A stretch of DNA of 64,000 nucleotides. Origin: Scyliorhinus canicula (Eukaryota). This document shows, piece after piece, positions 25,904 through 50,024 of the stretch (position 1 is its first letter; every line of letters starts with the position of its first letter). Where the stretch lies: positions 9,100,744 through 9,164,743 of the forward strand of contig NC_052170.1 in NCBI RefSeq assembly GCF_902713615.1. Reading direction: 5' to 3'. The notes beneath the pieces were generated by a model, which worked only from the letters and a program-made list of their open reading frames with translations, searched no databases and was not told where the DNA came from. Made by a program: the position numbers and the translations under genes.

Positions 25904-26379
25904 TGATAAATAATCTTCTTTATTTAAACCCACAAAAGCTTTCTGTTGTTATTTATATTGACTCAAGGGCTAAGAAGTACACACAGTTTCCTGAAATAAA
26001 ACACACCAATTACATTCAGTCAGGGAAAAGGACCAATATTTCAGTTTGTTCCCGACCTGGACAATAATGTTTGGTTACAGGCCTTAGGAGGAGTAGGCCA
26101 TTCGGCCCTTCGAATCTGCTCTGCCATTCAATATGATCATGGCTGACTTGATTGTGGTCTCAGCTCCACTTTCTCCGTCAGCCCCTCATAACCCCAGACT
26201 CCCTTGTTGAAAAGAAAATCCATCCAACTCAGCCTTGAATAAACTCAAGACATTTCTTCATGAATAAGTGCAACTACATTTGCACTGGAATGTCTACGAA
26301 GTACACGTTCATTCATAAAACATTAGGAAAGCATTTTCAATTTGTTTTGATTTTTTTTATACAATTAAGGGGCACTTTA

Positions 26380-27424
26380 ATTGTTTTTTCGGAATGGCAG
26401 CCGGTGACCAGCGGTGTCCCACAGGGTTCAGTGTTGGGGCCGCAGCTGTTCACCATATATATTAATGATCTGGATGAAGGGACTGGGGGCATTCTAGCAA
26501 AGTTTGCCGATGATACGAAGTTAGGTGGTCAGGCAGGTAGTGCTGAGGAAGTGGGGAGGCTGCAGAAGGATCTAGACAGTTTGGGAGAGTGGTGCAGGAA
26601 ATGGCTGAAGCAATTCAACGTGAGAAAATGTGAGGTCTTGCACTTTGGAAAAAAGAATCCAAGCATAGACTACTTTCTAAACGGTGAGAAAATTCATAAT
26701 GCCAAAGTACAAAGGGATCTGGGAGTGCTAGTCGAGGATTCCCTAAAGGTAAACATGCAGGTTGAATCTGTGATTAAGAAAGCGAATGCAATGTTGTCAT
26801 TTATCTCAAGAGGGTTGGAATATAAAAGCAGCGATGTGCTACTGAGCCTTTATAAGGCTCTGGTTAGGCCCCATTTGGAGTACTGTGTCCAGTTTTGGGC
26901 CCCACATCTCAGGAAGGACATACTGGCGCTGGAGCGTGTCCAGCGGAGATTCACACGGATGATCCCTGGAATGGCGGGTCTAACATATGATGAACGGCTG
27001 AGGATCCTGGGATTGTATTCATTGGAGTTTAGAAGGTTAAGGGGAGATCTAATAGAAACTTACAAGATAATACATGGCTTAGAAAGGGTGGACGCAAAGA
27101 AGCTGTTTCCGTTAGGCGAGGAGACGAGGACCCGTGGGCACAGCCTTAGAATTAGAGGGGGTAAATTCAGAACAGAAATGCGGAGACATTTCTTCAGCCA
27201 GAGAGTGGTGGGCCTGTGGAATTCATTGCCGCGGAGTGCAGTGGAGGCCGTGACGCTAAATGGCTTCAAGGCAGAGATAGATAAATTCTTGATGTCGCAA
27301 GGAATTAAGGGCTACGGGGAGAATGCTGGTAGGTGGAGTTGAAATGCCCATCAGCCATGATTGAATGGCGGAGTGGACTCGATGGGCCGAATGGCCTTAC
27401 TTCCACTCCTATGTCTTATGGTCT
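26380..27424 (+). mobile_element. Young 5'-truncated CR1 LINE (uninterrupted RT C-terminus) inserted into a minus-strand SINE
   Basis: GVPQGSVLGP..KFADDTK..RPHLEYC open to the stop at 27342. The host SINE resumes at 27425. Confidence 0.95.
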
Positions 27425-32400: not shown

Positions 32401-34003
32401 AAAACAGTGATGTTCTCCTGCTATCCTAGCCAATATTTCTCCTTCAGCTAACCACACCAAAAGACACTTTACCTAGTTAGTTTATTTATTTGTGGTTTAT
32501 GGGACCTTGGTGTCTGCAAACTGGTTCCCACATATGCCTACATAATTACAATGACTACACTTCAAATCATTCACTGGTTGTAAAGTGCCTCTCGGGCAAC
32601 CTCAAGACACGATACGGTGCTTATTCCTTCTGTTATGTTAATCTCAAATGTAATTTGTCAATCGAATTTATAGAATATGCAAGCATTTTATTACAAAGCG
32701 CATTGCAATGTGGATCCACAATGAACTTCAGAACACCATAATTCGTGACTTTCATCGAAATTAGAATTCAAACTCTACTTTCATTTGCTCACCAAAGGAC
32801 AAGAGCAAATACAGCACAGGATTCCAGCCCAAAGATTCCCGCTAAAAATCAGGCTGTGTGTGTGTCCCAGCCGGCCCGGCTCAACCTTTACACAGAAGAG
32901 GAAACTCAAATTTTGCATTTGTGAAGGAGCCGCAGCATTCATGACCAGATCTTGCGTCTAAATGGGAATTGTTACCCAATGAAAAGACATGGTGGATCGT
33001 GACATTTTCAGTAAAAATGGAGGCAATGACTCGCCACAATAACATGTACATCAGAAACTTTGCTGTAAAAGAGACGGATTTAAAAAAAGAAACATACAGT
33101 AGAAACAACTGCTAGGAACAAGCATAGCAGAGCTTTCAGTGCGAACCATTCTAGGGACACAGCGAGCCTTAGTTGCAACCTCCACACCCTTCAAAAGAGT
33201 TACTGGCAACCTTAAGATAGGAGCTGACAATTAATCCAATTTAATCAATTTAATTTGATATTTAGCAGCAAGAGCTTCTTGCCCCGAATCAATTCATTCC
33301 ATTCCCTTCACTTATTGAACTGCACCCGTCTGGCTAATGGTTCTGTCTACACAGCAAACCCAAACGCTTGACAGCAGGACTTAGGAGCAGAAGGCATTCG
33401 GCCCTTCTAGTCTGCTCCGCCAGTCGAGAAAATCATGGGGCTGGTTTGATCGTGGACACCACTCCACCCCACTCTCCCAGTCAGTCCCTACGAACATGGA
33501 CTACCCCTGCATTATCAAAAACCATATCCCGGCCTCGAATAAACGCAACGGATTTCTTCCAGAATGAACGCAATTGCATTAGAACTGAAATGAACCACAA
33601 TGTCTATGAACGACACAAATCATCTGTAATGTACAAGATCATGAAACATTTCTTCCATTTCTTTCTGTAGAAAGGAATCATTCAGTTGCAACTGACCAAG
33701 AAAACAACAATGCTGCTTGTATATCAGAATAATAGCACGTGCAGTGGCCAGCACATGTCACCCTCGATAACCATATATTTTAAGTTTAGTGAATCACTGA
33801 CCACTGTGAATTAAGAGGATTTCATCCACCGCCTGCGTGACTTGATACATTCTCTGGCATGATATTGTTTCCTGGTAACCAGCATTGTTGAATAAGCTAA
33901 AACGGGAGAGTACAATTGGTCAAAAGCTTCAATTTTAGGGGATGCTGGAGGAACCATGGCATTGAAGCATTGCAGTTATCAAAATTCTCTTGCATCTTTC
34001 CCT

Positions 34004-34737
34004 TCATTTCCTTTGATCCATTTCTGGTTGGAAAGAGCACCGTGGCGGCTCCCTGTCCTGCAACCTTTCGTCTTTCCCCTCTTGTGTTCCTTCCACCAGT
34101 CCCCTGTCGAAAAGCAAGTGACACCTCTTGTCTCTGTCCTCCTGCATTTCCTGCTGGGTAAACTGCCTCATGGCTTCCCAAATCCTACACAACATGTCTT
34201 CCTTCTCGCCCTCGTTCTTCTGCTGCCGCCGGTTCTTGATGCCTTCCCAGTTTTTCCGCAGCCGTTTCTGCCGCTGCTCGTCGGTCTCCTGCTCGCGGCG
34301 CCTTTTGATGCCGTCCCAGTTTCTGCGCAACCTTTGCTCCCGCTCCTCCTCGGATTCCTCCTGCCGGCGGACTTTGGTCGATTCCCAATTTTTCCGCAGT
34401 CTCTCCTCCCGCTGCTCCTGCGATTCCAGCTGCCGCCGGCTTTTAATGGATTCCCTGTTTCTGCGCAATCGTTCGTCCCTCTGCGCTTCCGTTTCCCTTT
34501 CACGGAACCGCTTCATGGCCTCGCGGTTCTTGCGCAGTCTGTCGTCCCGCTGCTCCTCGGACTCCATCTGACGGCGGACTCTCATTGCCTCCCTGTTTTT
34601 GCGCAGTCTGTCTTCCCTCTGCTCCGCCGTCTCGTCTTCCCGGTGCTTTTTCATGGCTTCCCGGTTCTTCCTCAGTTTCTCCTCTTTCTTGGAGTCCACG
34701 GCCTGTTTCTCAGCTAACAGCTCGCCAATCACTGGAT
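34004..34737 (-). CDS. Terminal coding exon of an unnamed STPR (23-aa repeat) protein gene
   Basis: Acceptor ctatctgtcttttaaag|ATCCA at 34737, open to the stop at 34004. Exact 23-aa periodicity E[TS]xxQR[ED]xRLR[KR]N[RW]ExxxxRRxx. Confidence 0.85.
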
Positions 34738-36489
34738 CTTTAAAAGACAGATAGACACAGCTGAGAGCATTTAGAACTGCGACATCACCCAGATTTGAGA
34801 CCAACATTGATATTCTACGGTTATGTTTTCAAATCGTGGCTCTTTTTCTTGGTTTAAACACAAAATTATCTGACGACAAATTTTCAAAAAGTGAATGTAA
34901 TGAGAGATTAATGCCACCCATATTATCAAGACCGGACCTGGCGGCGTTGTATTAGCATCCCTACCGCCGGACCAGAAGCTCCGCCATCGATTCCAATGCT
35001 AGGACTTGTTGGCCGTGGACACGATTCAAGGGCTGATGATCAGCACAGGAATCCTTCCACCATTTCCCCCCACCATTCCCCAAAAGGGTTTAAAAAAAAA
35101 AATCGGCGCGAAGATAAGCCAAAACAAAAAAGACTAGACTGCAGCGGAAAGGCGGAGATGCATTGTGCAGTTGAAGAGAGTTGCTAGACAGATCATAAAT
35201 TAGCGGAGTGTGTCAACATGTCCATTACTCCGCCGTTTGTTTGTTTTTTCCCCCCCCAAGGGCGTCAGTGTTGGAATGTGACAAGGAGAGGCTAGTGTTT
35301 CCTCAAAGGAGGATACGGTAAAATGTGGACATGCATGTATGTAAGGGAGGGAAGCTGCTTGAATGAACCTCCCACTGGCCTGTTTAAGAGTAGCTTTAGC
35401 AGACACCGGAGACATGTATGCCCTCGCAGCTAGGAGGTCCTAATGGAGGCAATGGATGAGGCAGAAAATGCTTAAACAGAGCAAAAATGGCAAGACAAAG
35501 TTGAAGCGAGCAAATTATTTCTACATTCGGTTGTTGCTCATCTAATGGCACTTGTCTGAACGTCAGGGAAACAGACTGCAGAGGATTACTGACCCCAGTG
35601 GTGCAGAGAAGCCGAATTATTACGCGTACAGTCAAAACTACTATCTCTAAACTCAGCTCTTAAGAATCATCATCCAGGCTTGAAACGTTAACTCTTGTTG
35701 CTCTCTACACAGATGCTGCCGGACCTGCTGAGATTTTTCAGCGTCCTCTGGTTTTTATTCCAGATGTCTGGTATCTATAGTACTTTTCTTTCATCTCTGA
35801 AGGAGTTTGGCTATTTTTCCCCGTACGCCAGTTCAGCCCCCCCAGTCTCAGCAGGAGTCAGTAATTCTGGCCAACCAGTCCTCTCCGTGCAGGAGCAAAT
35901 TGAAAAGATTTTGAAAGTAAAGAATAACGCTTTTTAAATGGCTTTGGTCTCGAAATGAAAAAAAGAGGATATGCTGGGAAGCGATCACAAATACAGGCGT
36001 ATTTTTTTTACATTACTTTAAAGAATCCACATTAAAAATGTCAAAGAAGAAAACAAATAGGAAAAAGCGGAAATAAAAATTGCAAATGGTCAGTAATGCT
36101 CAAAACACTGAACAGCACGAGTGTGAAAACACTTGGAACCAAAGCAAAACTAAAAGGCCATTTTTGTCTCAAACACCTGTGCCAGCTCTCCAACAGTTAG
36201 CCAGTTCATCCAATTTCACTTCGCTTTCCTCTAAACCCTTTTAAAAACATTTCAAAGTTATCTACTTCCCTTTTAAAGAGCCATCATGCTGCCGCTGCTA
36301 CAGTTTGCAGAAGGACATTCCATGGTTATTAACCACGGCAACTAGATTTTCTTGAATCGTCATTCTGTTGGCGATAATCTTAACTTTTATGCCCTCATTA
36401 CCTCCTCAAACGGTACCTTTTCCTTGATACCTTAATCAAACCTCTGAACCTTTCAAATAACTGTTACATCTCCTTTTACTTGATGTGCA

Positions 36490-37005
36490 CTACAGGGCAG
36501 AAGGAGACCATTCCGCCCATCGAGCCTCCACCAACGCTCCGAAAGAGCATGCTAACAAGGCCCATTCCCCCACCCTATCCCCATAACCCCACTAATCTGC
36601 ACATCATTGGACACTAGGGGTAATTTAGCGTAGCCAATTCACCTAACCTCTACATCTTTGGATGCTGCTCAAATTGCTATGAATCATAGAATTTACAGTG
36701 CAGAAGGAGGCCACTCGGCCCATCGAGTCTGTATCGGCCCTTGGAAAGAGCTCCCTACTTAAGCCCTCATCTCCACCCTATCCCCGTAACCCCACCTAAC
36801 CTTTTATGGGCACGCAAGGGCAATTTAGCATGGCCAGTCCATCTAACCTGTACATCTTTGAACTGTGGGAGGAAACCGGAGCACCCAGAGGAAACCCACA
36901 CAGACACGGGGAGAAGGTACAGACTCTGCACAGTGACCCAAGCCGGCAATCAAACCTGGGACCCTGGAGCTGTGAAGCAACAGTGCTACCACAGTGCTAC
37001 TGTGC
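36490..37005 (-). mobile_element. Two tandem HE1 SINEs (partial 36490-36665, full 36681-37005)
   Basis: Two reverse tails, one complete head. Confidence 0.88.
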
Positions 37006-37434
37006 ATTTTAAATTTCTTTTGGTGCTATAGTTTGTAGCGATTTGGCATAATGCTCGTGTTTATGCAGCAGCTCAAGTTGCTTTTTCCTGGTTCAGGGTC
37101 TACAGGAACTAATCACAGTGATTCTATTTGATAGTCTGTACAGCACATTGGAATATGCAGCACACAATCTTGCAACACAGGGTGTGAGGTCCGCGCTACT
37201 GATGTGGACCAAGTTCTTATTATGTTGGACCACAGGAGACTCGAGGAGGAAAAAAGTGAAGCAAGTCAACGGCAGCACATTCTCAAGACACTGCCTTAAC
37301 ATTAGCAGGGATCTAGCGTAGGATACAGCACAGAACTCCTTGCCTAAACTTTGATTGTAAGTTAACCTAATATTTCACTCTAGGAGGATCTGCCGCTCAT
37401 TGCTAATTTCATTCTTCATACTTTTTAAAAGAAA

Positions 37435-37651
37435 ATAAATTTAGAGTACCCAATTCTGTTTTCCCCCCCCAATTAAGGTGCAATTTGGCGTGGACAATCC
37501 ACCTACCCTGCGCATCTTTTTGGGTTGTGGGGATGAGACCCACACAGACACGGGAAGAATGTGCAAACTCCACACAGACAATGACTCGGGGCCGGGATTG
37601 AACCCGGGCCCTCGGTGCCGTGTGGCAGCAGTGCTAAGCACTGCGCCGCCC
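37435..37651 (-). mobile_element. HE1/V-SINE, short-tail subtype
   Basis: Reverse head and V-domain. Confidence 0.9.
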
Positions 37652-38286
37652 TTTCATTCTGCATACTCTACTTTCCCACACCATCCAATTTGTTTTGGGG
37701 CCAAAGCCGCAGTGGCCAATTTGTGCCAGGGCCAAGTTCCTTACATACCGAAACTAGTGCCTCCAGAACCACTATCTTAAAAATAAACCTCAGGTTGAAG
37801 ACCTCCATCTCCTCTTTCAGAACAGGTTCCAGACTCTGATAGCAGCACTTACACTGATTCAGCAAGATGTCATTTCCTCCCCTCTCCCTTCACATAGGCA
37901 GGCTACGTACAAAGAAATACAATGGGTTTTAGAAAGGAGTGGGAGGCACAAAAATATGTGCTGATATTTATTAAAGCAATGCAAAGCAAGCAGGGCTGGA
38001 AAGTTCCAGTTAACAAGGAGCTGACTTACTTTCCAGCTTCAAGCTCAAAAGCAATGGGTGTAGCAACTTGATGTTTACTCCCCAACTTCAATCCCTTGAC
38101 TCCTCTATTTTCCTGATGAATGTGAGCGTTTGAGGCCTGTTCCAGTTCTTTGCTACACAACTACCATACCTACACAAAAAGGGCGCAGTTTATTTTCCTT
38201 TTAAGGATTATATTTCTCTACGTAAGAGATTTCAGTTCAATGGCTTCCTCCAAACTCCTCTGTAAGTAAAGGGACCGCCGAGTGTT

Positions 38287-38464
38287 AATGAAATGAAAAA
38301 TGAAAATCGCTTGTCACAAGTAGGCTTCAGTGAAGTTACTGTGAAAAGCCCCTAGTCGCCACATTCCGGCGCCTGTTCGGGGAGGCTGGAATCGAACCGT
38401 GCTGCTGGCCTGCTTGGTCTGCTTTAAAAGCCAGCAAGTTAGCCCAGTGTGCTAAACCAGCCCC
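38287..38464 (-). mobile_element. Short tail-X SINE
   Basis: Reverse complement of the 28427-28612 type. Confidence 0.88.
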
Positions 38465-39365
38465 ATGTAATAATCTACCCAGACTGAAAGGACCAGCGTT
38501 GGAGCCTCAGCCAGTGTTCAGTTGGCAGATCTCAGCTGGGTGCTACAGTGGACAAGAGGCGCCCACAGCCAAGAGAGGAGATTTTTTTTTTTTTAAAAAA
38601 AGATGAATTAGTTAAGGTTTTCACTCCCGATTATGATTCACGAGTAATGGGCAATGGGGGAAAATAATGCTCAGACTGAGCTGTGATGTGCCTTTGGTCA
38701 GACAGCCAGTCAGCACACATGGTTATCACAAAGAATGGCCAGGCGGGCGAAGTAATGGAAAGTAAATGGCACTCAGACGCAAGCAAGAGCTGGAACTTTT
38801 AAGAGCAGAACGGGAAGCAAATGAAAAAAAAACGAAAACGTTTTCAGCCGGTGAAAGCTTTGGCAAGTTTACACGACACCAATTGAAAACCTTAGCTGCC
38901 GAACAATCTATCTTTCTTTTTAAAATAAAGGGTACTCTGGAATGACAGGGTGTAAATTTGACACAGGTGTCAGCTCATACTTGTTCCCAAAGGACCAACA
39001 AGGAGAAATTGAAGGGGGGGAGCGTGCAGCAAAAAAACCGGGATCACGCAAATCGAACATTTAAGGCAGGTGACAAAAAGCTTGGTCAAAGAGGTAGGTT
39101 TTAAGGACCGTCTTAAAAGAGACGCGTATGTAGCCAAAATGAGAAAATACACATCGGGGCTATCGGGAAAGCGCAAGGGAGTGGGACTAAGATGTCCTTT
39201 CAAAGAGGCCGAACAGACACAATGGGCCTCACCCTGTGGTTTACAAAGCACTTGGACACTGACACAAGTGCATGCGGAGGTCAAATTTTAGTTAATTACT
39301 AGGGTTAGGGTTATCTGTATTTGCGTAAAATAGTATGCACTTTACATCGCAATCGGCTCCGAGGG

Positions 39366-39684
39366 AGGGTTGCCAACCTTCCACGATTGGCCTGGAGTCT
39401 CCCAGAATTGAAGATCACTCAGTCCCCAGAGGACGCTGGTGTGTGAAATCGTGGAAGAAATATCAGCGGGGTATTAAAGAAGTTGTTTCCTCCCCCACCC
39501 CCTCTACTCGGTTTGATCTTTTCTCTTTCCCTGTTTTGACATCCCCCAATTGAGTCTTTTTGCTCTCTAACTGGTAGTGCATCACAAGGATGGATATGTC
39601 AGCTGAACAGTGGCAGGCGTGGGGAAAATTTATGCACTGAAATCTCCAGAAATACATTTAATTTAATCACAGTTGGCAATCCTA
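39366..39684. mobile_element. Old hAT-like MITE (related copy ~7570-8150)
   Basis: Termini AGGGTTGCCAAC / GTTGGCAATCCT; internal sequence shared with 7575-7680. Confidence 0.5.
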
Positions 39685-39880
39685 CTTAGCGGGGTTACCG
39701 CACCACCTTTGGACTGAGTAAGAATGGGGATTATAAGAGGCCAGAATAGCAAGATGGCCGTACTACGCACTGATCTCAAAGTGCTAAGTCGCAACATCAT
39801 AGACTGAAAGACGTTCACATTCTTACAATGGCTATCAATAGCTTTGTGACTTAAATACCATCGACTTGGAAACAACTTAC

Positions 39881-39943
39881 CATGCAGAATTGGAAGACCT
39901 TTCAAAGACAGCTCGGTCATAGTTCTCCTGAGGTGATCCCAGT
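39881..39943 (-). CDS. STPR gene exon 5 (NWDHLRRTMTELSLKGLPILH)
   Basis: tttgtag| acceptor, ATG|gtaagt donor, 63 nt, phase 1->1. Joins the terminal exon in frame (G+AT = Asp). Confidence 0.7.
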
Positions 39944-40043
39944 CTACAAACATGCAAGACAAAATTCACAACTCTTTGAATACCATTGTCAAATTCCCAA
40001 AGGAAAAATGCTCTTCAGTTTTCGAGGCCGCAGCACAGCTTAC

Positions 40044-40172
40044 TGCGAGACACCCTTGATGGATTCTCACTACTGGTCGAACTGTGATCTGAATGATGTC
40101 CTTTTGCTTTCTCCAGCAGTAAAAGGATTGATATCAATGGATGAGCAGCCTTAAAGCAGTTGCCAAGGCCAA
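40044..40172 (-). CDS. STPR gene exon 4 (GLGNCFKAAHPLISILLLLEKAKGHHSDHSSTSSENPSRVSR)
   Basis: cctttgcag| acceptor, |gtaagc donor, 129 nt, phase 1->1, open in the required frame. 100-nt intron to exon 5. Confidence 0.6.
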
Positions 40173-40726
40173 CTGCAAAGGATTACTGGAAGATTTGGCA
40201 CTCTGTTTATTAATTTTGCACCTTTGCGGTGTAAATAAAAGCGGCAGTTCTGATGACGCCACGAGGAATTGGTTGTCACCACCAATCAGTTCAACAAGGG
40301 AAAGATGGGGATAAACAAAATGACAAAAAGGTTTCTAATTCTTTGCAATTGCCCATTTGCAAAATAGTTCCTAATGGCAAATCTTCTACTTTAAGAATAC
40401 ATCGCAAAATTATAATAACTCATCAGAGTATATAGAATTCTGATTCCGATCTGGTTGTACCCTGAAACCCAAATCTTACTGAATATTCCCCTGGACTCCC
40501 TGCCCGCAACACGTGGCATATTTCTTTTAAAAATAGTGCCTCTGCCCCCCCCTAACTTCCCCAGCTCTTGCCGGGTATGGTTCTATGGTTGCTAGTAGTT
40601 CTCCAATACTCCACCCAAACGGCTACCAATTCTTCGTTGTGAGCCCAGGCAGCCAGCAGCCCGCTTGGCCACGGGAAGCATCACAGTCGAACCCAATCAT
40701 GTCCTGTCCTGTCTGGTGTTCTGTAC

Positions 40727-40789
40727 CTTGGGTGAAGCACTGAAGAGCCACAGGCAGTTGTGGAGCCATACCCCAGCAGGAGTCATCAC
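40727..40789 (-). CDS. STPR gene exon 3 (DDSCWGMAPQLPVALQCFTQ)
   Basis: Strong acceptor ttttctccctgccttctctgcag|, donor AAG|gtacag, 63 nt, phase 1->1, open. Confidence 0.5.
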
Positions 40790-41125
40790 CTGCAGAGAAG
40801 GCAGGGAGAAAAGCGAGGGGACAAAGTTTAAAAACACATGTGCCATTCAACATCGTCTCCCACAAGCTGTCAATTTCTACTGCTCCCAAACCTCAGGCCC
40901 TGTACCCTTCTTCCTTGTACCGACCTCTGACCTAGGTGTATCATGTGCCGTAGCTAGGCAACAAAAGGGCAGAAGAATCTGAATGGCTCAATAAAATTTA
41001 TTGCCTCTATAATAAAGCCTAAACATTTTATTAGTTATGAAAAACATATGGATAAATTGACAGGTAGCTAAAATCGGTGATTTCTAACACTGATCGCATG
41101 CGTTAAGAAATCAAATTCCACAAAT

Positions 41126-41360
41126 AGTCACTGCCTGTGTGGAGTCTGCACATTCTCCCCATGTCTGCGTGGGTTTCCTCCGGATTCCTCCCACAAGTCC
41201 CGAAAGACGTGCTTGTTAGGTGAATTGGACATTCTGAATTCTCCCTCTGTGTACCCGAACAGGCGCCGGAATGTGGCGATGAGGGGATTTTCACAGTAAC
41301 CTCATTGCAGTGTTAATGTAAGCCTATGTATTATAATAATAATAATCTTTATTGTCAAAA
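41126..41360 (+). mobile_element. 5'-truncated V-SINE with tail X
   Basis: V-domain plus gaattctccctctgtgtacccgaacagg..cacagtaac tail. Confidence 0.88.
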
Positions 41361-41864
41361 GTTTGTGGCTCACTACCAACCTTTATTCTCCATTAATTTA
41401 GTTTCCAACACATTTCCTCCATTAGTGGAATCCCACGTCTGTGCAATTTCGTGATTTAATCCAATTACCTAGTTTTCAAAACACTGCAACATAATTACCA
41501 GGAGGTCCTCTTGCTCAATGCTCTTTCCCACAATATTCTCCAGAAACCAGCACAGACACAAATGGACCAAATGGCCTTCTTCTGTGCTGTAACCATTTTA
41601 TGGTTCTTACTGGGGGAAAATCCCAATGGTAACATCTTTCTTCCAACACCCAAATGGCCATTCACCAAAGTCATGAGACAGCGAGTGTCAGCAGGCTATT
41701 TGACTGAAAGGGCATCACAGTCGAACTCCAAACACACTTCGAGCAGGCATCACCTTGTAGCAACCTCCGGCGAGGGAACCCCGGTTGCCTTTCCCACTTC
41801 CCAACTCCGGGCGCCCGGAACAATTGTCACATCTCAGTCGATGCCAGCAAATAAACTTTTTTAA

Positions 41865-42070
41865 AAATAAACTTAGAGTACCCAATTCATTTTTTCCAAT
41901 TAAGGGGCATTTTAGCATGACCATAGCACATCTTTGGGTTGTGGGGGCGAAACCCACGTAAACACGGGGAGAATGTGCAAAACGTCACACGGACAGTGAC
42001 CCAGAGCTGGGATCGAACCTGGGACTCAGTGCCGTGAGACAGCAGTGCTATCCACTGCGCCACCGTGCTG
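41865..42070 (-). mobile_element. HE1/V-SINE, short-tail subtype
   Basis: Reverse head and V-domain. Confidence 0.88.
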
Positions 42071-42153
42071 CTGCCAGCAAAGAAACTGAACAGGGGATCT
42101 TCAACTGGAGGAGCACCGAATAAAATTCCTTCAAAACCAAGTGGCACAAATAT

Positions 42154-42460
42154 AGGGCAGCATGGTAGCACAGTGGTTAGCACTATTGCTTCACAGCGCC
42201 AGGGACTCGTGTTCAATTCCCAGCTTGGGTCACTGTCTGTGCGGTGTCTGCACGTTCTCTCCGTGTCTGCATGGGTTTCCTGCGGGTGCTCCGGTTTCCT
42301 CCCACCAGTCCCGAAAGGCGTGCTTGTTAGGTGAATTGGACATTCCGAATTCTCCCTCTGTGTACCCGAACAGGCGGCAGAATGTGGCGACGAGGGGCTT
42401 TTAACAGTAACTTCAATGCAATGTTAATGTAAGCCTACTTGTGACAATAATAAAAATTAC
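42154..42460 (+). mobile_element. Full V-SINE with tail X
   Basis: HE1 head, V-domain and tail ..aagcctacttgtgacaataa. Confidence 0.9.
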
Positions 42461-42674
42461 TATCCATCCTTTTAAAAAAAAGTGCATGAAAATTTCAATC
42501 AGCAGCTCCAAATTTTTGTATATTTTGCTTCTCACATATTGTCACTATTCTCTCTAATCTATGCTCACAGAATGATACACGTCATATTTATTGTTCTTTT
42601 TCTAGCTCCAAATCAGCTTGCTGGGGCCAAAGGTTCATTATTACTTCAAATATTTTTTACATATGGTCACATTC

Positions 42675-43065
42675 AAAGAACAAAGAAAAGTACAACACAG
42701 GAACAGGACCGGCCCTCCAAGCCTGTGCCCTCCATGCTGCCCGTCTAACCCAAAACCTTCTGCACTTCCGGTGTCCGTATCCCTCTATTTCCATCCTATT
42801 CACGTATTTATCAAGATGTTCCTTAAACTTCATATCGTCCCTGCTTCCACCACCTCCTCCGGTAGCGAGTTCCAGGCACCCAGTACCCTCTTGTGTAAAA
42901 GACTTGCCTTGTACATCTCTTCTAAACTTTGCCCCTCACACCTTAAATCTATGTCCCCTAGTAATTGACCCTTCCACCCTGGGAAAAAGCTTCTGCCTAT
43001 CCACTCTGTTCATGCCCCTCCTAGTTTTGTAGACTTCTATCAGGTCACCCCTCAACCTCGTGTCG
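42675..43065 (-). mobile_element. CR1 LINE 3' fragment
   Basis: Reverse RLRGDLIEVYK...GAWNSLP and tail. Confidence 0.85.
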
Positions 43066-43400
43066 TTCCATTCATCAGGCAAGGTTTGGTGTCCATCACC
43101 AATTTTCAAGAAAGAAAAAAATTACTTCTACAAAGTGTTTAGCAAAATGTGCACCGGGAAACCAAATTCTCAAGAATTCTGTATTTGTTCACGAATAAAA
43201 ACATTCTTTCACATGAGCATGATTTCCTTTGGGTACTGCGGTCTTTTGTCAATTTCTGCACTTGCGGGTAATCCGTTAACATTCGTAGAGAATAGAAAAT
43301 CACAAGTTCTACACCTCGCACCAAAATAGAATCAGCTATTTCTATGCCTTTGCTTATTTGAAACACTGACTACAGCTGTTAGATATTTTTGAAGTCTTAC

Positions 43401-43440
43401 CACAAAGAAAAGGATGTCCATTCGAAGACAGTTCATTCAT
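43401..43440 (-). CDS. STPR gene exon 2, coding part (MNELSSNGHPFLC); whole exon 43401-43464
   Basis: ttttctttgtag| acceptor, GTG|gtaaga donor, ATG at 43440 with A at -3, phase 1 out. Paralogous to exon 5. Confidence 0.6.
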
Positions 43441-43699
43441 AGTTCTTCGGGGATAATCCTGTCTCTACAAAGAAAACCTCTTTAATATTACCTCTCACAA
43501 CACAAGCGTCTCCATGTTAAAATAAAGCATTTTAAATCAAAACAATCACGTTCTACATCGATATGTTACGTCTGCAAGAGGGGGAAATCCTGCTCAGGTC
43601 ATAGCCTTTGGATGGTGTACTGGAGCTACACTTCAAGGAGCTCCTACACTGGTTTTGTGAAGATCTTTGGGACATCCTGAGGTTGAGAACGACAACTAC

Positions 43700-44560
43700 A
43701 TCAAGAACTTGCATATATAGTGCGTTTTGACGACCCAGGCACTACACAGGAGCCTCACCAACTAACACTTGACTCAGAGGCACACAAGGAGGTGTCGGGG
43801 TCAAAACGTGGTCAGAGGTAGGTTTTCAGGACCGTCCTAAAGGAGGTGGAGAGAGTGGAAGAGCGTGAAGACTTGGCAGCCGAAGGTACTGCCGCCCATG
43901 CTGGAGCTATTAAAATCGGGGATGTTTATGCAACCAGAACCAGCGGAACGCAGAGACGTCAGAGGACTGTGAGAGGTTACAAAGATATAGAGGGGCAAGG
44001 CAATAGAAGGATTCGAAAACAAGGATGAGAATTTTAAGATTGACGCAATTCTTGACCAGACGTTAATGTAAGTCAGCAAGCCATGGGGTGGTGGGTGAAG
44101 AGGAATTGGTGAGAGATAGGATTTGGGCTGCAGAGAGAGCAGCCAGAAGTGCAGTGGAATAATCGCATTTAGCGGCAACAAGGATATGGATGAGTATTCA
44201 GCAACAGTCAGGGCAATGTTACAGGGGGAGAAGTAGGCAACACGATGGAGTGGGCACACGGTCGGAAGCTCATCTCGGTATCATCAAGGTCGCAAACAGT
44301 CTGGTTCAGCTCAGGCAGTTGCTCGGAGGTAAGGGCTGGAGTTTGCGCTTGGGGAATGGAGTTTGAAGCACGGACAAAGATAGCGGTTTCGGCCAGCCCA
44401 AAATTGAGTTGGAAGAGATTTCTGCTCATTCAATACGAAGGACAATTTAGGGTTAGTGGAGGGGTCAGGACGGCTGGCTATGAGGCGAGACTGGGTCTCC
44501 TTGTATATGTTGTGTTGTCAGATGATGTTGCCAAGAAACCGTGTACATGAGAAGCTACGA
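43700..44560 (-). mobile_element. Old L2-like LINE remnant (smaller pieces ~2500-2930, 6920-7120, 8475-8700, 15850-16000)
   Basis: MSRNLFQLNFG / MSRSFLQLNVGKTE and ILKFSSLFSNPS-type L2 ORF2-end remnants. Confidence 0.6.
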
Positions 44561-44749
44561 TAGGTAACAGATACAAGTTATAATGCACAATGTATTACGC
44601 TGCTACCACAGTGCAGATCTCACATTCCAAGGCTAAATTCATATTATTATTATTAAAGTAAACATCGCATTGGATGTCACAGACTTGCATTACCATTTGA
44701 CAAGGAAATTTATTGGAAAATGGTTATCAATTCGGGGCTCCAGGTCAGA

Positions 44750-45340
44750 TGCATTAAGCCGCAACTCCACCGTCCTGCCCGTTCTCCATAAACCTTCAAC
44801 CCATTACCAATTAAAATCTGTCTAACTCCTCCTTACACTTACTCACTGTCTCGAGTAGCAAACTAGTCAGATTCACAACCCTTTGGGAGAAGCAATTTCT
44901 CCTCAACTCGGTTTGAAATTTGTTACCGCTTATTCTGAGATTATGGCCTCTCGTTCTAAAATGCCCCACAGCAGGAAGCATCCGCTCCACGTCTACTTCA
45001 GCCATACCTTTCATACCTCAATTTGAACTCCCCTCATTCTTCTAAACTCCAGAGAGAGTCGGCCTAAACTTTTCAATCTCGCCTCATACAACAAACCTTT
45101 CATCTCTTCAATCAGCCCAGTGAACCTCCTCTGAACTGCCTCCAATGCCACTACATCTATCCTCAAATAAGGGGACCGAAACTGTGCACAATACTCCAGG
45201 TGTGGTCTCACCAATGCATTGTACAGTTGCAACAACACTTCCTTACCTTTATGCTCTATTTCTTTAGCTATAAATGCCAACATTCCATTCGCTTTCTTTA
45301 TTATCTGCCGTACCGACATGCTAGTTTTCTGTGACTCGTC
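44750..45340 (-). mobile_element. CR1 LINE 3' fragment
   Basis: KKANGMLAFI..LVRPHLEYC..QRRFT. Confidence 0.9.
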
Positions 45341-45469
45341 TAGGACAGCTTGACTTAGGCACTGTAGGGTAGTTGGCACCCTGTGGAAGACCTGTATCTC
45401 AGAATTGGCAATTTTAGGAGAGGTAGAGAGAAAAATGGAAATAAAAGACACTCACTATGATGAGACCTA

Positions 45470-45688
45470 GGCGGCACGGTGGCGCAGTGGTTAGCATTGT
45501 TGCCTCACAGCGCCACGGACCCGGCTTCGATCCCGGCCCCGGGTCACTGTCCGTGTGGAGTTTGCAGATTCTCCCCGTTTCTGTATGGGTCTCGCACCCA
45601 AAGGTGTGTAGACTAGGTGGATTGGCCACGCTAAATTGCCCCTTAACTGGAAAAAATAATTGGGTACTCTAAATCTATTTTTAAAAAA
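45470..45688 (+). mobile_element. HE1/V-SINE, short-tail subtype
   Basis: Head and V-domain. Confidence 0.9.
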
Positions 45689-46127
45689 TCATGGTGAGTC
45701 CTGGGCCTGCGGTGCATTTAATTAAAGAACCAATAGGCCAAATGGCCTCTTTTTGTCCCCTAACTATTCTGTAATTAAATCATTCATGATATCTTTGTAT
45801 AAATATTCTGACAAGTTAAAACAAGGAAACATTGTTATGGGGAAACAGATCACAAGATACATATGGTGATGAAAGACCAGTGGGAAAGATGTTCAAATCA
45901 TCCATCACAGCATGCAACCAGTTCTTAAATGATTCTAAAGTTATCAGCACTACTAACTACTTGGAAGTATTGATCACTGTGTAAAGGTGACTTCAGACCT
46001 ATACATGCATTTGGCGACTGTTACCCGTTGATCTCATTATCACGGTTTATATTTATCTGGAGAAATAACACATTCCTGACAATACGATTAAAAAATAATT
46101 TGTAATTGGACAAAGATGTGACATATA

Positions 46128-46262
46128 GGGCACGGTAGCACAGTGGTTAGGACTATGGCTTCACAGCGCCAGGGTCCCGGGTTCGATTCCCGTCTTGGGT
46201 CACTGTCTGTGTGGAGTCTGCACGTTCTCCCCGTGTCTGTGAGGGTTTCCTTCGGTTTCCAC
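46128..46262 (+). mobile_element. HE1 SINE 5' half
   Basis: Head and partial V-domain, truncated by other repeats. Confidence 0.85.
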
Positions 46263-46369
46263 TGTTATGGGCCAGGGTTTGGAGAACCCCAAAGTGTATC
46301 ATGGAGTTCACCCGACCCACAACTTTTAATGGATTGTGGTATGGGGAGCACATGGTCCACTCTACAGGA

Positions 46370-47063
46370 CACTCATGAGGCTTAAACGTTGCAGCTGCAC
46401 ATACACATTACAATCCCCACAGACTCATCCAAGCCAACAAGATTGCACTGGTTGTGGAGTGCGCCCATACAGCTGATGAGTCGGCGGGGGCCAGAGGGCA
46501 CCTGGGGGGGGTGGCCTGGGGAGACACCTATATGACTCGTGGCCCTATGTTCACAGTGGGCAGTCAGCGGCGTGCACACCTGCATGGCTGCCTTTCCGGC
46601 TGCAACAATGGTGTTCCATGCCCGTCCATCCTGACCCCACCGCCCACCTTCTGGCACCCCCCTCTACTCCCCCAGCCCTGGCAGAAGCCCCCCGGCCAAC
46701 AGCACAGCTGTCAGCAAACTATGGTCATGTTGGACACTTTCCGTACCCCCTCTCTCTCCCTCAGCAGCCATGACCCTGGTTTCACAATTTTTGAAAGCAC
46801 AAGTGAACTCCGCCATCAGGAACTTGGCCCATCAGAGGCGTAGAATCGCAGACACCCTGGGGAATACCGGGTCAGGCCCGCTAACGATATGCAAACAGTG
46901 TTTACTGTAAGTGCGTTCCTGCCGCATTGACGTCGTTGTCGAGGCGACGGAGAATTGCGATTTGGCGTCAAATCAGCGGCCACCATAATTTTGGCATCAG
47001 AACCTATTCGCCACACAACCACGTTTTCCGATGTTATCGTCAACCAACAGAGAATCCCACCCG
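46370..47063. mobile_element. Partial GC-rich Harbinger-like element (one end)
   Basis: Ends in gagaatcccaccc, like the 54910 and 29770 termini. Confidence 0.5.
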
Positions 47064-47350
47064 TAATACGTCACCATGCGTTCATCAATCTCACAGATAA
47101 AGAGATATAGATTTCACTTTGCATTATGAAAATGGGGGGGGGGGGGGGGGGGGAGAAGAGAGTTGGCAGGCACTTCAGGAGCAGATCAGAGGAATGGAAG
47201 AATTATTGAGAAAGCTGATGAGCGTAAGGGAGGAGACACCAGGGGGTCTCAGAACAATCATGTTAGCCTCCCCCAGTCTGCACTTTGGACAAAGGAGTAT
47301 AGAGTATTGCTGTTTGTTTTTAAAGAGTGGAAAAGCAGACCCTGAAATTT

Positions 47351-48090
47351 AAAGAACAAAGAAAATTACAGCACAGGAACAGGCCCTTCAGTCCTCCCAG
47401 CCTGCGCCGATCCAGATCCTGTATCTAAGCCTGTCACCTATTTTCCAAGAATCTACTTCCCTCTGTTCTCTGCCCGTTCATATATCTGTCTAGATGCATC
47501 TTAAATGATGCTATCGTGCCCACCTCTACCACCTCCGCTGGCAAAGCTTTCCAGGCACCCACCACCCTCTGCGTAAAAAACTTTCCACGCACATCTCCCT
47601 CAAACTTTCCCCCTCTCACCTTGAAATCGTGACCTCTTGTAATTGACACTCCCAATCTTGGAAAAGGCTTGTTGCTATCCACGCTGTCCATACCTCTCAT
47701 AATTTTGTAGGCCTCAATCAGGTCCCCCCTCAACCTCCGTCTTTCCAACGAAAACAATCCTAATCTACTCAACCTTTAGCACCCTCCATACCAGGCAATG
47801 TCCTGGCAAACCTCCTCTGCACCCTCTCTAAAGCATCCACCTCCTTCTGGTAATGTGGCGACCAGAACTGCACGCAATATTCCAAATGTGGCCTAACCAA
47901 AGTCCAATACAACTGTAACATGACCTGCCGACTCTTGTACTCAATACCCCGTCCGATGAAGGCTAGCATGCTGTATGCCTTCTTGACCACTCTATCGACC
48001 TACGTTGCCACCTTCAGGGTACAATGGACCTGAACTCCAAGATCTCTCTGGACATCAATTTTCCCCAGGACTCTTCCATTGACCGTATAG
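47351..48090 (-). mobile_element. CR1 LINE 3' fragment
   Basis: KKAYSMLAFIGRGIEYKS..RPHLEYC..RRRLRGDLIE; tail. Confidence 0.93.
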
Positions 48091-48258
48091 TCCTAAAGGA
48101 GGCCATTTGTTTCGAAGCGGAGTTGGAGGCACATTTGCTGAGGAGTGCTGCAGGGTGAAGCATCCTTTTTGCTCCCTCACTGGGCTGTGGTGAAAGTGTC
48201 AGCAGTGTTTTTGAGGAGGGGACAATAATAAGTGTTGAGGTTTCTGGAAGCATCTTAC

Positions 48259-48500
48259 CTGGGCAGCTCTGGGTTAAACTAGCTGCAGTTCAGCATCCCC
48301 ACCATCGCCCTCTTCACACCCCCCCCCCCCCCCCCTCAAACATAAGGGGAGGATTTAAAAATTGCTATCCAGTTATTTGGCTCTTTCTGGAGCGGAGAAC
48401 CAGCAAGGCCGCTGCTGCCGCTGGGCTCCAGCTGCCTCCAACACACAAATTCAGAGCAGGCGATCGGCGAGGGCGACTAAAAGCGGCGGGTCGACGCAGG
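48259..48500 (-). other. Predicted non-coding first exon of the STPR gene (5' end approximate)
   Basis: Strong donor CAG|gtaaga at 48259 leaving the CpG island. Spliced to exon 2, it puts an in-frame TAA upstream of the 43440 ATG. Confidence 0.55.
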
Positions 48501-49090
48501 CGCATGAGGGTGCCGGCGGGTTGGCGCAGGCGCATTCGGGCGGGGGAGGGGCTGACTTAGACCGACGCAGGCGCATTAGCGAACAGGGGCGAGGTTTAGA
48601 TCGACGCAGGCCCATTAAGCGGGAGTGTGGCTGGGGTTGACGCGAACGCTCTCGCGGGGTGGTGGGCGGGTAGCTGCCAGATTGACGCAAATGCATTAGC
48701 GGGTGGAGGGGAGGGGCGGTACAAGCGGGCAGGGGCGTGGCTTAGATCAACGCATGCGCATTATCGGGAAAGGTGCGGCTGCGAGACCGACGCATTAGCG
48801 GGCGGGGGGGAGGGGCCGCATTATCGGGAGGGGCGTGGCTTAGACTGCCGCAGGCGCATTAGCGGGAAGGGGCGTGGCTTAGACAGACGCATGCGCATTA
48901 GCGGAAAGGGGGCGTGGCTTAGACCGACGCAGGCGCATTATCGGTGTGTTGGTGGCGGGTTGGCGGTTAGTACGGAAGCCGCTACGGTCGGGATAAGGCG
49001 AAGGGTGAGGGATAAGAGGGAGAGCTGACACGGAGGACAATTCGGTGGTGTCGTTGTTTAAATACCCCCCCTTCAAAAGAACAAGGATGA
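48400..49090. promoter_or_regulatory. CpG-island bidirectional promoter (HOOK2 / STPR gene)
   Basis: Very high CpG density. Repeated NRF1-like CGCA[GT]GCGCA motifs, Sp/KLF GGGCGTGGC boxes and an ETS CGGAAG (~48973), between two divergent first exons. Confidence 0.85.
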
Positions 49091-49131
49091 GTTTGGATAA
49101 AGCCGAGCTGTGCGACAGCCTTTTGCTCTGG
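49087..49131 (+). CDS. HOOK2: HOOK2 coding exon 1 (MSLDKAELCDSLLLW)
   Basis: ATG at 49087, 45 nt, donor TGG|gtgaga. Closely matches the human HOOK2 N-terminus MSVDKAELCGSLLTW. Confidence 0.93.
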
Positions 49132-49235
49132 GTGAGATTTATAAGCGGCTCACTTGCCCCCCCCACAACTTGCCCGACTTTTACTCTTTAAAGAGGTCGA
49201 CACCGAGCCTCAGCTCAATGGGAGCCAAAAGAAAA

Positions 49236-49478
49236 AGCCCTGAGGGGGTCTGGGCCACCCTGAGGGGGGTCTGGGCCACCCTGAGGGAATCGGGGCCACC
49301 CTGAGGGAATCGGGGCCACCCTGAGGGAATCGGGGCCACCCTGAGAGGATCCGGGCCACCCTGAGGGATCCGGGCCACCCTGAGGGGGTCCGGGCCACCC
49401 AGAGGGGGTCCGGGCCACCCCGAGGGATCCAGGCCACCCCGAGGGGCTCGGGCCACCCTGAATGGTCCAGGCCACCCA
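49236..49478. repeat. ~19-20-bp GC-rich minisatellite (GGCCACCCTGAGGG core) in HOOK2 intron 1
   Basis: About 12 tandem units with the ggccaccc core. Confidence 0.93.
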
Positions 49479-50024
49479 GAGATAATGTTTTTTTCCAGGT
49501 GGCATCTCCCCTCCACCCCCTTCCTGGAAGACCTGACAGAGGGAGCAGGTTACCGGCTGCAGAGGGATTGGAGTGAAAACTCACAGTGACCGGCTGGCTG
49601 GCTGCAGGGTATAAACAGCCTGGAAAACAAGGAGGGATTCAGAGCAGAGTGGATGACATCCGCACCCCAGGACAAAGAAAGCAAGGACGTGCATTTGTGT
49701 AGCGCCTCTCGCGACCTCTGGGAATCCCAAAGTGCTTTACAGCCAATGGAGGAGTTCCTCCGCAAAGTGTCGTTGCTGGTCAGGGAAAACGCAGGTAGCT
49801 TATTGACCCACAGCAAGCTCTGGCGATGCGATAGCGATCCAGTCAATCTTGCGTTTTCTTTCTGAAGTGACTGAAGGATAAATATTGGCCAGAACACGCG
49901 GGCAATAAGTTTCTGGCATTTCTGAATAGCGGCTGCGGCGATACTTTGCGTTGCTAATGGAGCGGCGCGCCCTCGGCGCTGCACGGAGAGTGTCAACCTT
50001 GATCTTTTCTCTTAGTGGTCAAGG

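What the first reader, a model, noticed from the sequence alone, without database searches (positions are those of the whole stretch)
34004..48500. Unnamed spliced gene encoding an expanded STPR-repeat protein, head-to-head with HOOK2
Seen in sequence: minus-strand exons 43401-43464, 40727-40789, 40044-40172, 39881-39943 and 34004-34737 all have canonical GT/AG sites and phase-1 junctions, and they stay open in one frame (40+63+129+63+734 = 1029 nt, 342 aa). A donor at 48259 leaves the HOOK2 CpG island. The last exon has exact 23-residue repeats, e.g. ETAEQREDRLRKNREAMRVRRQM, ESEEQRDDRLRKNREAMKRFRER, ETDEQRQKRLRKNWEGIKNRRQQ. Established: E1-[TS]2-R6-R9-L10 23-mers define the STPR DNA-binding domain of silkworm FMBP-1 and vertebrate ZNF821, each with four repeats plus an AT-hook or C2H2 fingers. 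In human, the divergent protein-coding neighbour of HOOK2 is JUNB. Inference: this is not ZNF821 (no C2H2 fingers, different flanks, 6+2 repeats). It may be a cartilaginous-fish-specific or amniote-lost DNA-binding factor, possibly domesticated from the STPR-like N-terminal repeats of a Helitron protein and co-regulated with HOOK2.
Basis: partly seen in the sequence, partly recalled or inferred. Interest (0 to 1): 0.85.

Follow-up and report, generated by a model that had tools for sequence, protein, structure and literature searches.

The report
Shark/ray STPR-repeat DNA-binding gene
A real, spliced and expressed gene beside HOOK2 encodes a small protein made almost wholly of 23-residue STPR repeats (a known DNA-binding repeat); it is kept under strong purifying selection between two distant cartilaginous fishes but has never been studied.

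Summary
RNA contigs from four studies show these junctions:
- exon 1→2 (43401→40789)
- exon 1→4 (43401→39943)
- exon 2→4 (40727→39943)
- exon 4→5 (39881→34737)

The predicted exon 3 (40044-40172) is in no spliced contig and is not conserved. The products are therefore 278 aa (E1-E4-E5) and 299 aa (with exon 2), not 342 aa.

The last exon holds nine in-phase 23-residue units, six of them canonical. It matches Pfam STPRs above threshold. An AlphaFold model superposes on the FMBP-1 STPR-DNA crystal structure at 1.1 Å over 64 residues.

Narcine bancroftii has the only ortholog found in the databases searched. It is auto-named "trichohyalin-like", 85-87% identical, and also head-to-head with HOOK2. 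Codon positions differ 10/6/43% and repeat units are 1:1 orthologous, so the protein is selected.

A conserved 140-nt exon in intron 4 carries stops in every frame and is joined to exon 4 in one run. I read it as a likely poison exon.

The nearest other arrays include Helitron-like (Helentron-type) proteins, but a transposon origin is not shown.

Verdict: a new member of the STPR family, of moderate interest. The scan has no other note of this kind on other DNA.

The parts
48260..48405 (-). Probable non-coding first exon (5' UTR) leaving the CpG island. The upstream limit is a minimum.
   Evidence: Donor CAG|GTAAGA at 48260/48259. An X13 contig has 146 letters 5' of exon 1. RNA-like runs of 8 studies hold 0.55-0.73 of its sampled words. 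The junction to 43464 was not seen, so this part is inferred.
48406..49095 (.). Shared divergent promoter region (CpG island) between this gene and HOOK2
   Evidence: GC 0.60-0.69 over 48350-49550. A 39-bp tandem repeat of 3.3 copies lies at 48817-48944. The HOOK2 first coding exon is at 49096-49131 on the + strand.
43401..43464 (-). Exon 1, with the start codon at 43440-43438. It codes for 13 residues plus the first base of the next codon.
   Evidence: Loose ends at 40790 and 39944 are the reverse complement of its 3' end in X1, X7, X9 and X13. It is 38/40 identical to Narcine coding exon 1. In-frame stops lie upstream if the 5' exon is as proposed.
40727..40789 (-). Exon 2, an optional 63-nt cassette that adds 21 residues in frame
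   Evidence: Joined to exon 4 and to exon 1 in X1, X7 and X9, and skipped in X1, X9 and X13. It is 49/63 identical to Narcine exon 2, which is 61 nt, so the reading frame is not conserved.
39881..39943 (-). Exon 4 (constitutive), an old duplicate of exon 1
   Evidence: Present with sharp borders in all four runs. It is 56/63 identical to Narcine. It aligns with exon 1, splice sites included, in both species.
38030..38169 (-). Conserved alternative exon with stops in all three frames. It is a likely poison exon: inclusion ends the protein five codons after exon 4.
   Evidence: X1 record 1 joins exon 4 to 38166-38137, 30/30 letters. Acceptor and donor are identical in Narcine (L001 12606-12750). 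It lies inside a 301-nt block of 78% identity in an otherwise unalignable intron. It was seen in one run only.
34004..34737 (-). Exon 5: the last coding exon, holding the whole STPR array, a C-terminal tail and the stop codon (34006-34004)
   Evidence: The acceptor is used in X1, X7, X9 and X13. The ORF is open. It is 87% identical in protein and 79% in DNA to Narcine.
34220..34633 (-). Six canonical STPR units (units 2-7), consensus E-[TS]-x-E-Q-R-x-x-R-L-R-[KR]-N-[RW]-E-x-[IM]-K-x-R-R-[QE]-x
   Evidence: Exact 23-residue spacing. Position counts over both species. Pfam STPRs E=5e-9. The AlphaFold model breaks its helices every 23 residues at E1-T/S2.
34082..34219 (-). Degenerate units 8 and 9, in phase but lacking E1-T2. 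They are predicted as one long helix with unit 7 and are the best conserved part.
   Evidence: 100% and 96% protein identity to Narcine. Unit 8 is 94% identical in DNA. Helix 152-210 in the model.
34634..34702 (-). Degenerate unit 1. It keeps L10-R-K-N-R-E but has lost E1-T2.
33245..34003 (-). 3' UTR (short form). A longer form probably runs to about 32670.
   Evidence: The X7 contig has 1493 letters 3' of exon 4, which is 734 + 759. AATAAA sites are at 33254 and 33245. The X13 contig has 1785 letters. The next signal is at 32692.

Best explanation
This is a single-copy, expressed, protein-coding gene of cartilaginous fishes, transcribed divergently from the HOOK2 CpG island.

Its conserved product is exon 1 + exon 4 + exon 5: 278 aa, pI about 9.5. 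A 299-aa variant includes exon 2. The product is a short N-terminal peptide followed by an array of STPR repeats, with six canonical 23-residue units flanked by three degenerate ones.

By analogy with the solved FMBP-1 STPR-DNA complexes, each unit should be a two-residue linker plus a 21-residue helix. The helices should zig-zag along the DNA major groove, about 4 bp per unit. The protein would then cover roughly 24-36 bp and act as a nuclear DNA-binding or architectural factor.

The phosphate-contacting and helix-capping residues (E1, T/S2, R6, R9, L10, R20) are kept. The base-facing ones are replaced (N13, R/W14, I/M17, R21). The preferred DNA is therefore probably not the AT-rich target of FMBP-1.

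A conserved exon with stops in intron 4 probably diverts part of the transcripts to an unproductive form.

Shown: transcription, four splice junctions, the repeat anatomy, family membership by profile, conservation and synteny.
Inferred: DNA binding, footprint length, the poison-exon role and the 5' exon.
For: - Splice junctions appear in RNA contigs of four studies.
- Pfam PF21107 scores 36.9 bits against a cut-off of 27. The Narcine ortholog scores 51.5 bits.
- The only PDB sequence hit is the FMBP-1 STPR, 5d23 (E=1.5e-3).
- The AlphaFold model has mean pLDDT 87, with helix breaks exactly at each E1-T/S2.
- 5d23_A is the top hit of 48,161 chains: Z 6.5, rmsd 1.1 Å over all 64 residues, 33% identity.
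- The defining residues are taken from PMC4856987 and counted.
- The ortholog in Narcine bancroftii is also head-to-head with a HOOK gene.
- Differences by codon position are 10%, 6% and 43%. Four-fold sites differ at 0.54 and dN is 0.064.
- Each repeat unit is closest to its positional counterpart in the other species.
Against: - No experiment on this protein exists.
- The structural Z (6.5) does not stand above unrelated long helices (Z 6.0-6.4), and Foldseek found nothing.
- AlphaFold may simply reproduce 5d23.
- Tyr16 and the hydrophobic base contacts of FMBP-1 are not kept.
- The protein is rich in E/R/K/Q, so a charged single helix or coiled coil is conceivable.
- The runs are only guessed to be RNA by the tool, although the joints show they are.
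- Copy number in the whole genome was not measured.
Confidence: 0.7

Rival explanations
1. Same gene, but its origin is a domesticated piece of a Helitron-like element. The STPR array of a Helentron-type transposase N-terminus was captured next to HOOK2 and kept as a host DNA-binding factor.
For: The best non-orthologous hits are P0006 (94.9 bits, STPRs + DUF6570) and P0008 (amphioxus; STPRs + DUF6570 + Helitron_like_N). Of 81 nearest relatives, 10 carry DUF6570 and 3 carry Helitron_like_N, the commonest partner domains. STPRs are a published captured domain of Helitron-like elements (PMC11417382). The whole array sits in one exon.
Against: The other top hits are non-transposon proteins of bryozoans, mosquitoes, ladybirds and arachnids. 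Identity is only 30-46% and confined to the repeats. No Rep, helicase or DUF6570 remnant lies in or near the gene. Named relatives of P0006 are from sponge and amphioxus, none from elasmobranchs. Arrays of 23-residue units carry little tree signal.
Confidence: 0.22
2. A charged helical structural or scaffold protein, 'trichohyalin-like' as NCBI named the Narcine ortholog. It would be a single alpha-helix or coiled coil, and its likeness to STPR would be compositional.
For: The product is very rich in E, R, K and Q, with 75 basic and 65 acidic residues of 278. Many coiled coils score about as well as 5d23 in the structure search.
Against: The period is exactly 23 residues, with invariant E1, R6, R9, L10, R11, N13 and R21, not a heptad pattern. 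The Pfam STPRs score is above the curated cut-off in both species. 74 of 81 relatives are STPR proteins. The predicted helices break at every unit start, as in the STPR crystal structure.
Confidence: 0.1
3. A paralog of ZNF821, the known vertebrate STPR gene, that lost its C2H2 fingers and expanded its repeats.
For: ZNF821 is the STPR protein named for vertebrates in the literature read here. A vertebrate source for the array would be simplest.
Against: The 278/299-aa product has no C2H2 motif. Among 82 HMMER hits, only two weak ones (E > 1e-4) have C2H2 motifs, and those are teleost proteins with C-terminal fingers. Invertebrate and transposon arrays score far higher. ZNF821 itself was not compared directly.
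Confidence: 0.08
4. Transcribed by-product of the HOOK2 bidirectional promoter, or a decaying transposon fragment, with a chance ORF.
For: It shares a CpG island with HOOK2. Its introns are full of SINE and LINE debris. No protein from the window's own genome was in the protein collection.
Against: The ORF is intact and 85-87% identical in protein to a species whose introns are mostly unalignable. Third-position changes are seven times as frequent as second-position changes. Exons, splice sites and synteny are conserved.
Confidence: 0.03

Closest known systems
FMBP-1 (fibroin-modulator-binding protein 1, Bombyx mori) STPR domain; PDB 5d23, 5d2q, 5d2s
   Same: Tandem 23-residue units with E1, T/S2, E4, R6, R9, L10, K12 and R20. 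There is a two-residue linker plus a 21-residue helix. The predicted zig-zag superposes at 1.1 Å over three units. Like FMBP-1, it has no other recognised domain.
   Different: Six canonical plus three degenerate units instead of four. The base-facing residues differ: M13, S14, A17 and L21 are replaced by N, R/W, I/M and R. Tyr16 is absent. The product of HMMER similarity is only 21.5 bits. It is a vertebrate gene with five exons and alternative splicing.
ZNF821 (vertebrate STPR protein with C2H2 fingers)
   Same: A vertebrate protein with an STPR array of the same Pfam family.
   Different: No zinc fingers and more repeats. The locus is different, beside HOOK2. It is not among the strong HMMER hits. 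It was not compared directly.
N-terminal STPR arrays of Helitron-like (Helentron/HLE2) transposases, e.g. P0006 and amphioxus P0008
   Same: These are the highest-scoring non-orthologous arrays. They share L10-R-K-[ND] and T17-K-x-[KR]-R features.
   Different: No DUF6570, Rep or helicase part. The gene is single-copy in the window and syntenic in two species. Identity is 34-39%.
Narcine bancroftii 'trichohyalin-like isoform X1' (P0001, 333 aa)
   Same: It is the ortholog: same neighbour (HOOK), same exons 1, 2, 4 and 5, and 1:1 repeat units.
   Different: It is an automatic prediction with a misleading name. Its model uses a 61-nt exon 2 and an unrelated 113-nt exon 3 to stay in frame. The conserved isoform would be 275 aa.

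Membership tests
STPR domain (Pfam PF21107; FMBP-1/ZNF821 type) | Tandem repeats of strictly 23 residues | tested here: met
   Seven successive spacings of exactly 23 residues. Nine units are in phase.
STPR domain (Pfam PF21107; FMBP-1/ZNF821 type) | Glu1, Thr/Ser2 and Arg9 conserved in each repeat (PMC4856987) | tested here: met
   12 of 12 canonical units (two species) have E1, T/S2 and R9. Units 1, 8 and 9 have lost E1-T2.
STPR domain (Pfam PF21107; FMBP-1/ZNF821 type) | Profile score above Pfam's curated cut-off | tested here: met
   36.9 bits against 27. The Narcine ortholog scores 51.5 bits.
STPR domain (Pfam PF21107; FMBP-1/ZNF821 type) | Phosphate-contacting residues Arg6, Arg9, Leu10, Tyr16, Arg20 | tested here: inconclusive
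   R6, R9 and L10 are present in 12/12 units and R20 in 10/12. Position 16 is A, G or S, never Tyr.
STPR domain (Pfam PF21107; FMBP-1/ZNF821 type) | Hydrophobic base contacts Met13, Ser14, Ala17, Leu21 (AT-rich shape readout) | tested here: not met
   The residues here are N13, R/W14, I/M/T17 and R21. This bears on DNA specificity. The paper's alignment of homologs stresses only E1, T/S2 and R9.
STPR domain (Pfam PF21107; FMBP-1/ZNF821 type) | Two-residue linker plus 21-residue helix, helices at an angle (zig-zag) | tested here: met
   The prediction breaks helices at 34-36, 57-59, 81-82, 103-105, 127-128 and 149-151. Superposition on 5d23_A gives rmsd 1.1 Å over 64 residues. This is a prediction, not an experiment.
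STPR domain (Pfam PF21107; FMBP-1/ZNF821 type) | Binds double-stranded DNA along the major groove | not testable with these tools
   Needs EMSA, SELEX or a structure.
ZNF821 orthology | C2H2 zinc fingers together with a four-unit STPR array | tested here: not met
   No zinc-finger family in Pfam. No C2H2 pattern in the products. There are six plus three units.
Helitron-like element (autonomous or fragment) | Rep/helicase (Helitron_like_N, PIF1) or DUF6570 next to the array; many copies | tested here: not met
   Only STPRs is found in the ORF. The large ORFs of the window are LINE reverse transcriptases. There is one copy in the window. Genome-wide copy number was not tested.
Trichohyalin-like (automatic name of the ortholog) | S100 EF-hand head and long irregular E/R/Q-rich repeats | tested here: not met
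   There is no S100 or EF-hand hit, and the repeats are a strict 23-mer STPR. The name reflects composition only.

The most novel reading that the evidence does not exclude
This is an elasmobranch-restricted gene, or one lost in bony vertebrates, born from the STPR array of a Helitron-like transposase. It has been kept for hundreds of millions of years as a stand-alone protein that tracks the DNA major groove over about 30 bp with a new base-reading surface (N13, R/W14). It limits its own output through a conserved poison exon.
Probability: 0.15. Interest if true: 0.65.

Novelty: new member of a known kind. Interest (0 to 1): 0.45.

Why it matters
STPR is a rare DNA-binding fold in which tandem helices run along the major groove. 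In the literature read here it has been studied structurally only in one silkworm factor.

This gene would be a second vertebrate STPR gene beside ZNF821. It has no other domain, more repeats and a different base-facing surface, and it is conserved between deeply diverged cartilaginous fishes. That makes it a natural test of how repeat number and residues 13, 14, 17 and 21 set DNA preference.

It also corrects a misleading automatic name ('trichohyalin-like'). It adds an unannotated gene to this genome and offers a candidate case of transposon-domain domestication and of poison-exon control.

None of this overturns current knowledge.

Tried and rejected
The exon 4→5 junction therefore had to be read from loose ends, and exon 5, the 3' UTR and the 5' exon were never laid.
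2. Predicted exon 3 (40044-40172) and the 342-aa product are rejected.
3. Foldseek against PDB found no match.
4. Rfam over 32000-49500 found nothing.
5. A word-based search with the unique C-terminal tail found only Narcine.
6. A search for an elasmobranch source element through P0006 found only sponge, amphioxus and unnamed metagenome relatives.
7. The NG86 dS (3.2) is inflated by two-fold sites. I rely on codon-position counts and four-fold sites instead.
8. The scan's notes hold no other STPR or Helitron finding in this genome. That is weak evidence against dispersed copies.
9. No repeat-unit phylogeny was attempted, because 23-residue units carry too little signal.
10. Complex prediction was not used, because no protein partner is claimed.


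Full report
**1. The observation**

The minus strand holds an open frame at 34004-34807 (267 codons). From the AG at 34739-34738 onward it encodes an array of repeats. The motif [RKM]-L-[RC]-[RK]-[NI] recurs eight times at exactly 23-residue spacing. All five proposed exons have AG and GT borders, and the joined frame is open. The sequence-level observation is therefore correct.

**2. Transcription and splicing**

Eighteen runs of the same organism, from seven studies, hold the last exon. Seven of them hold 0.91 of the sampled words, and 0.913 is exactly the exon's share (734 of 804) of the stretch searched.

The second attempt, on 39500-41100 with four runs from four studies, gave clear results:
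- Coverage exists only over 39881-39943 and 40727-40789, apart from two thin unspliced contigs.
- A joint 39943/40727 has CT..AC ends, which is GT..AG on the minus strand, in X1, X7 and X9.
- Loose ends before 39881 in all four runs are the reverse complement of the first letters of exon 5.
- Loose ends behind 40790 (X1, X7, X9) and behind 39944 (X1, X9, X13) are the reverse complement of the last letters of exon 1.

The junctions 1→2, 2→4, 1→4 and 4→5 are therefore real. The predicted exon 3 (40044-40172) is in no spliced contig.

The products are 278 aa (exons 1-4-5; 34.6 kDa, pI 9.5) and 299 aa (with exon 2), not 342 aa.

Contig lengths imply a 3' UTR of about 760 nt ending at the AATAAA pair at 33254/33245, plus a longer form.

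One contig carries 146 more letters 5' of exon 1. The stretch 48260-48405, which ends in a good donor, is held by RNA-like runs of eight studies.

**3. Conservation**

The only close relative is P0001 of the electric ray Narcine bancroftii. It appeared in 5.8 billion protein clusters and in 1.84 billion representatives read in full by HMMER. NCBI named it 'trichohyalin-like isoform X1'.

Its locus is also head-to-head with a HOOK gene, with an adhesion GPCR downstream. In the window, HOOK N-terminal coding exons lie on the + strand at 49096-49131 and 55169-55276.

DNA of the two loci aligns only at a few places:

| Region | DNA identity |
|---|---|
| Exon 1 | 88% |
| Exon 2 | 74% |
| Exon 4 | 82.5% |
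| Exon 5 | 79% |
| One block in intron 4 | 78% |
| HOOK exons | 75-85% |

In exon 5, 208 of 240 codons keep the amino acid. Differences fall 10%, 6% and 43% on codon positions 1, 2 and 3. Four-fold sites differ at 0.54 and dN is 0.064. This is strong purifying selection on the protein.

Every repeat unit is most like its positional counterpart in the other species (75-94% in DNA) and less like its neighbours (45-75%). The array is therefore old and stable.

Narcine exon 2 is 61 nt, against 63 nt here. Only exons 1-4-5 give an orthologous open frame in both species, 278 and 275 aa. Exons 1 and 4 are old duplicates of each other in both species.

**4. A conserved exon with stops**

The conserved block in intron 4 (37908-38202) contains a 140-nt exon at 38169-38030. 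Its acceptor and donor are identical in Narcine, where the exon is 145 nt. It has stops in all frames in both species.

The X1 loose end at 39878 matches 38166-38137 exactly, so exon 4 is spliced to it in that run. Inclusion ends the frame five codons after exon 4.

I read it as a poison exon. That is an inference from one run plus conservation.

**5. What the protein is**

Pfam finds only STPRs, at 36.9 bits against a cut-off of 27. The one PDB sequence hit is the FMBP-1 STPR domain.

The paper on that structure (PMC4856987) gives the defining features:
- strict 23-residue repeats with conserved Glu1, Thr/Ser2 and Arg9
- Arg6, Arg9, Leu10, Tyr16 and Arg20 on the phosphates
- Met13, Ser14, Ala17 and Leu21 on the bases
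- a two-residue linker plus a 21-residue helix
- 4 bp covered per repeat
- most proteins with four repeats, a few with three or with five to seven

Here the six canonical units of both species have invariant E1, R6, R9, L10, R11, N13 and R21, T/S at position 2, and R20 in 10 of 12. Position 14 is R or W, position 16 is A, G or S, and position 17 is I, M or T.

An AlphaFold model (mean pLDDT 87) breaks its helices at each E1-T/S2. Of 48,161 PDB chains, the best match is 5d23_A, with rmsd 1.1 Å over all 64 residues and 33% identity. Its Z of 6.5 does not stand clear of unrelated long helices, and Foldseek found nothing.

I conclude that it is a member of the STPR family. It most likely binds DNA along the major groove over about 24-36 bp. 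Because the base-facing residues differ, its preference probably differs from FMBP-1's AT-rich sites.

**6. Origin**

Of the 81 next-best proteins, 74 are STPR proteins. The commonest partner domains are DUF6570 (10) and Helitron_like_N (3). The top hit P0006 and the amphioxus P0008 are of this Helentron type.

STPRs are a published captured domain of Helitron-like elements (PMC11417382).

Other top hits are ordinary proteins of bryozoans, insects and arachnids. No transposase remnant lies near the gene. The named relatives of P0006 are from sponge and amphioxus.

A transposon origin is possible but unshown. A ZNF821 origin is less likely on scores but was not tested directly.

**7. Verdict**

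This is a real, unstudied gene that is, as far as the protein collection shows, unannotated in this genome. It is a new member of the STPR family with a corrected exon structure. Interest is moderate. The scan's notes contain no similar finding on other DNA.

Noticed in passing
window 34151-34219 (-): Repeat unit 8 is 65/69 identical in DNA to Narcine, against 75-81% for units 1-7. Even synonymous sites are frozen there. This could be an RNA-level constraint or chance.
   Followed up: no
window 37908-38202 (-); L001 12572-12867: A 301-nt block of 78% identity sits in an otherwise unalignable intron. It extends 33 nt upstream and about 120 nt downstream of the stop-bearing exon, as around regulated alternative exons.
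   Followed up: partly
window 43401-43464 and 39881-39943 (-): Exons 1 and 4 are duplicates of each other, with the same length, phase and splice-site context and a shared RRTM-x-ELS motif. Both are present in Narcine, so the duplication predates the split.
   Followed up: yes
window 48817-48944: A 39-bp tandem repeat (3.3 copies, 88% matches) with GGGGCGTGG and GCGCATGCG-like cores lies in the CpG island shared with HOOK2. More degenerate copies flank it.
   Followed up: partly
window 36700-37005 and about 35 other places: A SINE family is scattered through the window on both strands at 65-87% identity. Six copies or fragments lie inside this gene's introns. Its core at 36878-36918 tripped the read-laying filter.
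   Followed up: partly
window 12977-15142 (-), 26260-27342 (+): LINE reverse-transcriptase ORFs (RVT_1, E=7e-33 and 2e-10). Smaller fragments of the same C-terminal region lie inside the gene's first intron at 45011-45451 and 47434-47990.
   Followed up: partly
run X14 (organism B): A run labelled as another organism holds 0.90 of the sampled words of the last exon. That implies a near-identical sequence, so either a very close species or a labelling matter.
   Followed up: no
window 48321-48340 (-): A run of about 20 G sits inside the probable first exon. It may explain why RNA contigs hold only 55-73% of that exon's words.
   Followed up: no
L001 19632-25764 (-): In Narcine the gene's downstream neighbour is an adhesion GPCR (EGF_CA, GPS, 7tm_2). 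No counterpart was seen in window 1-33000, which is mostly repeats, so the locus is much expanded here.
   Followed up: no
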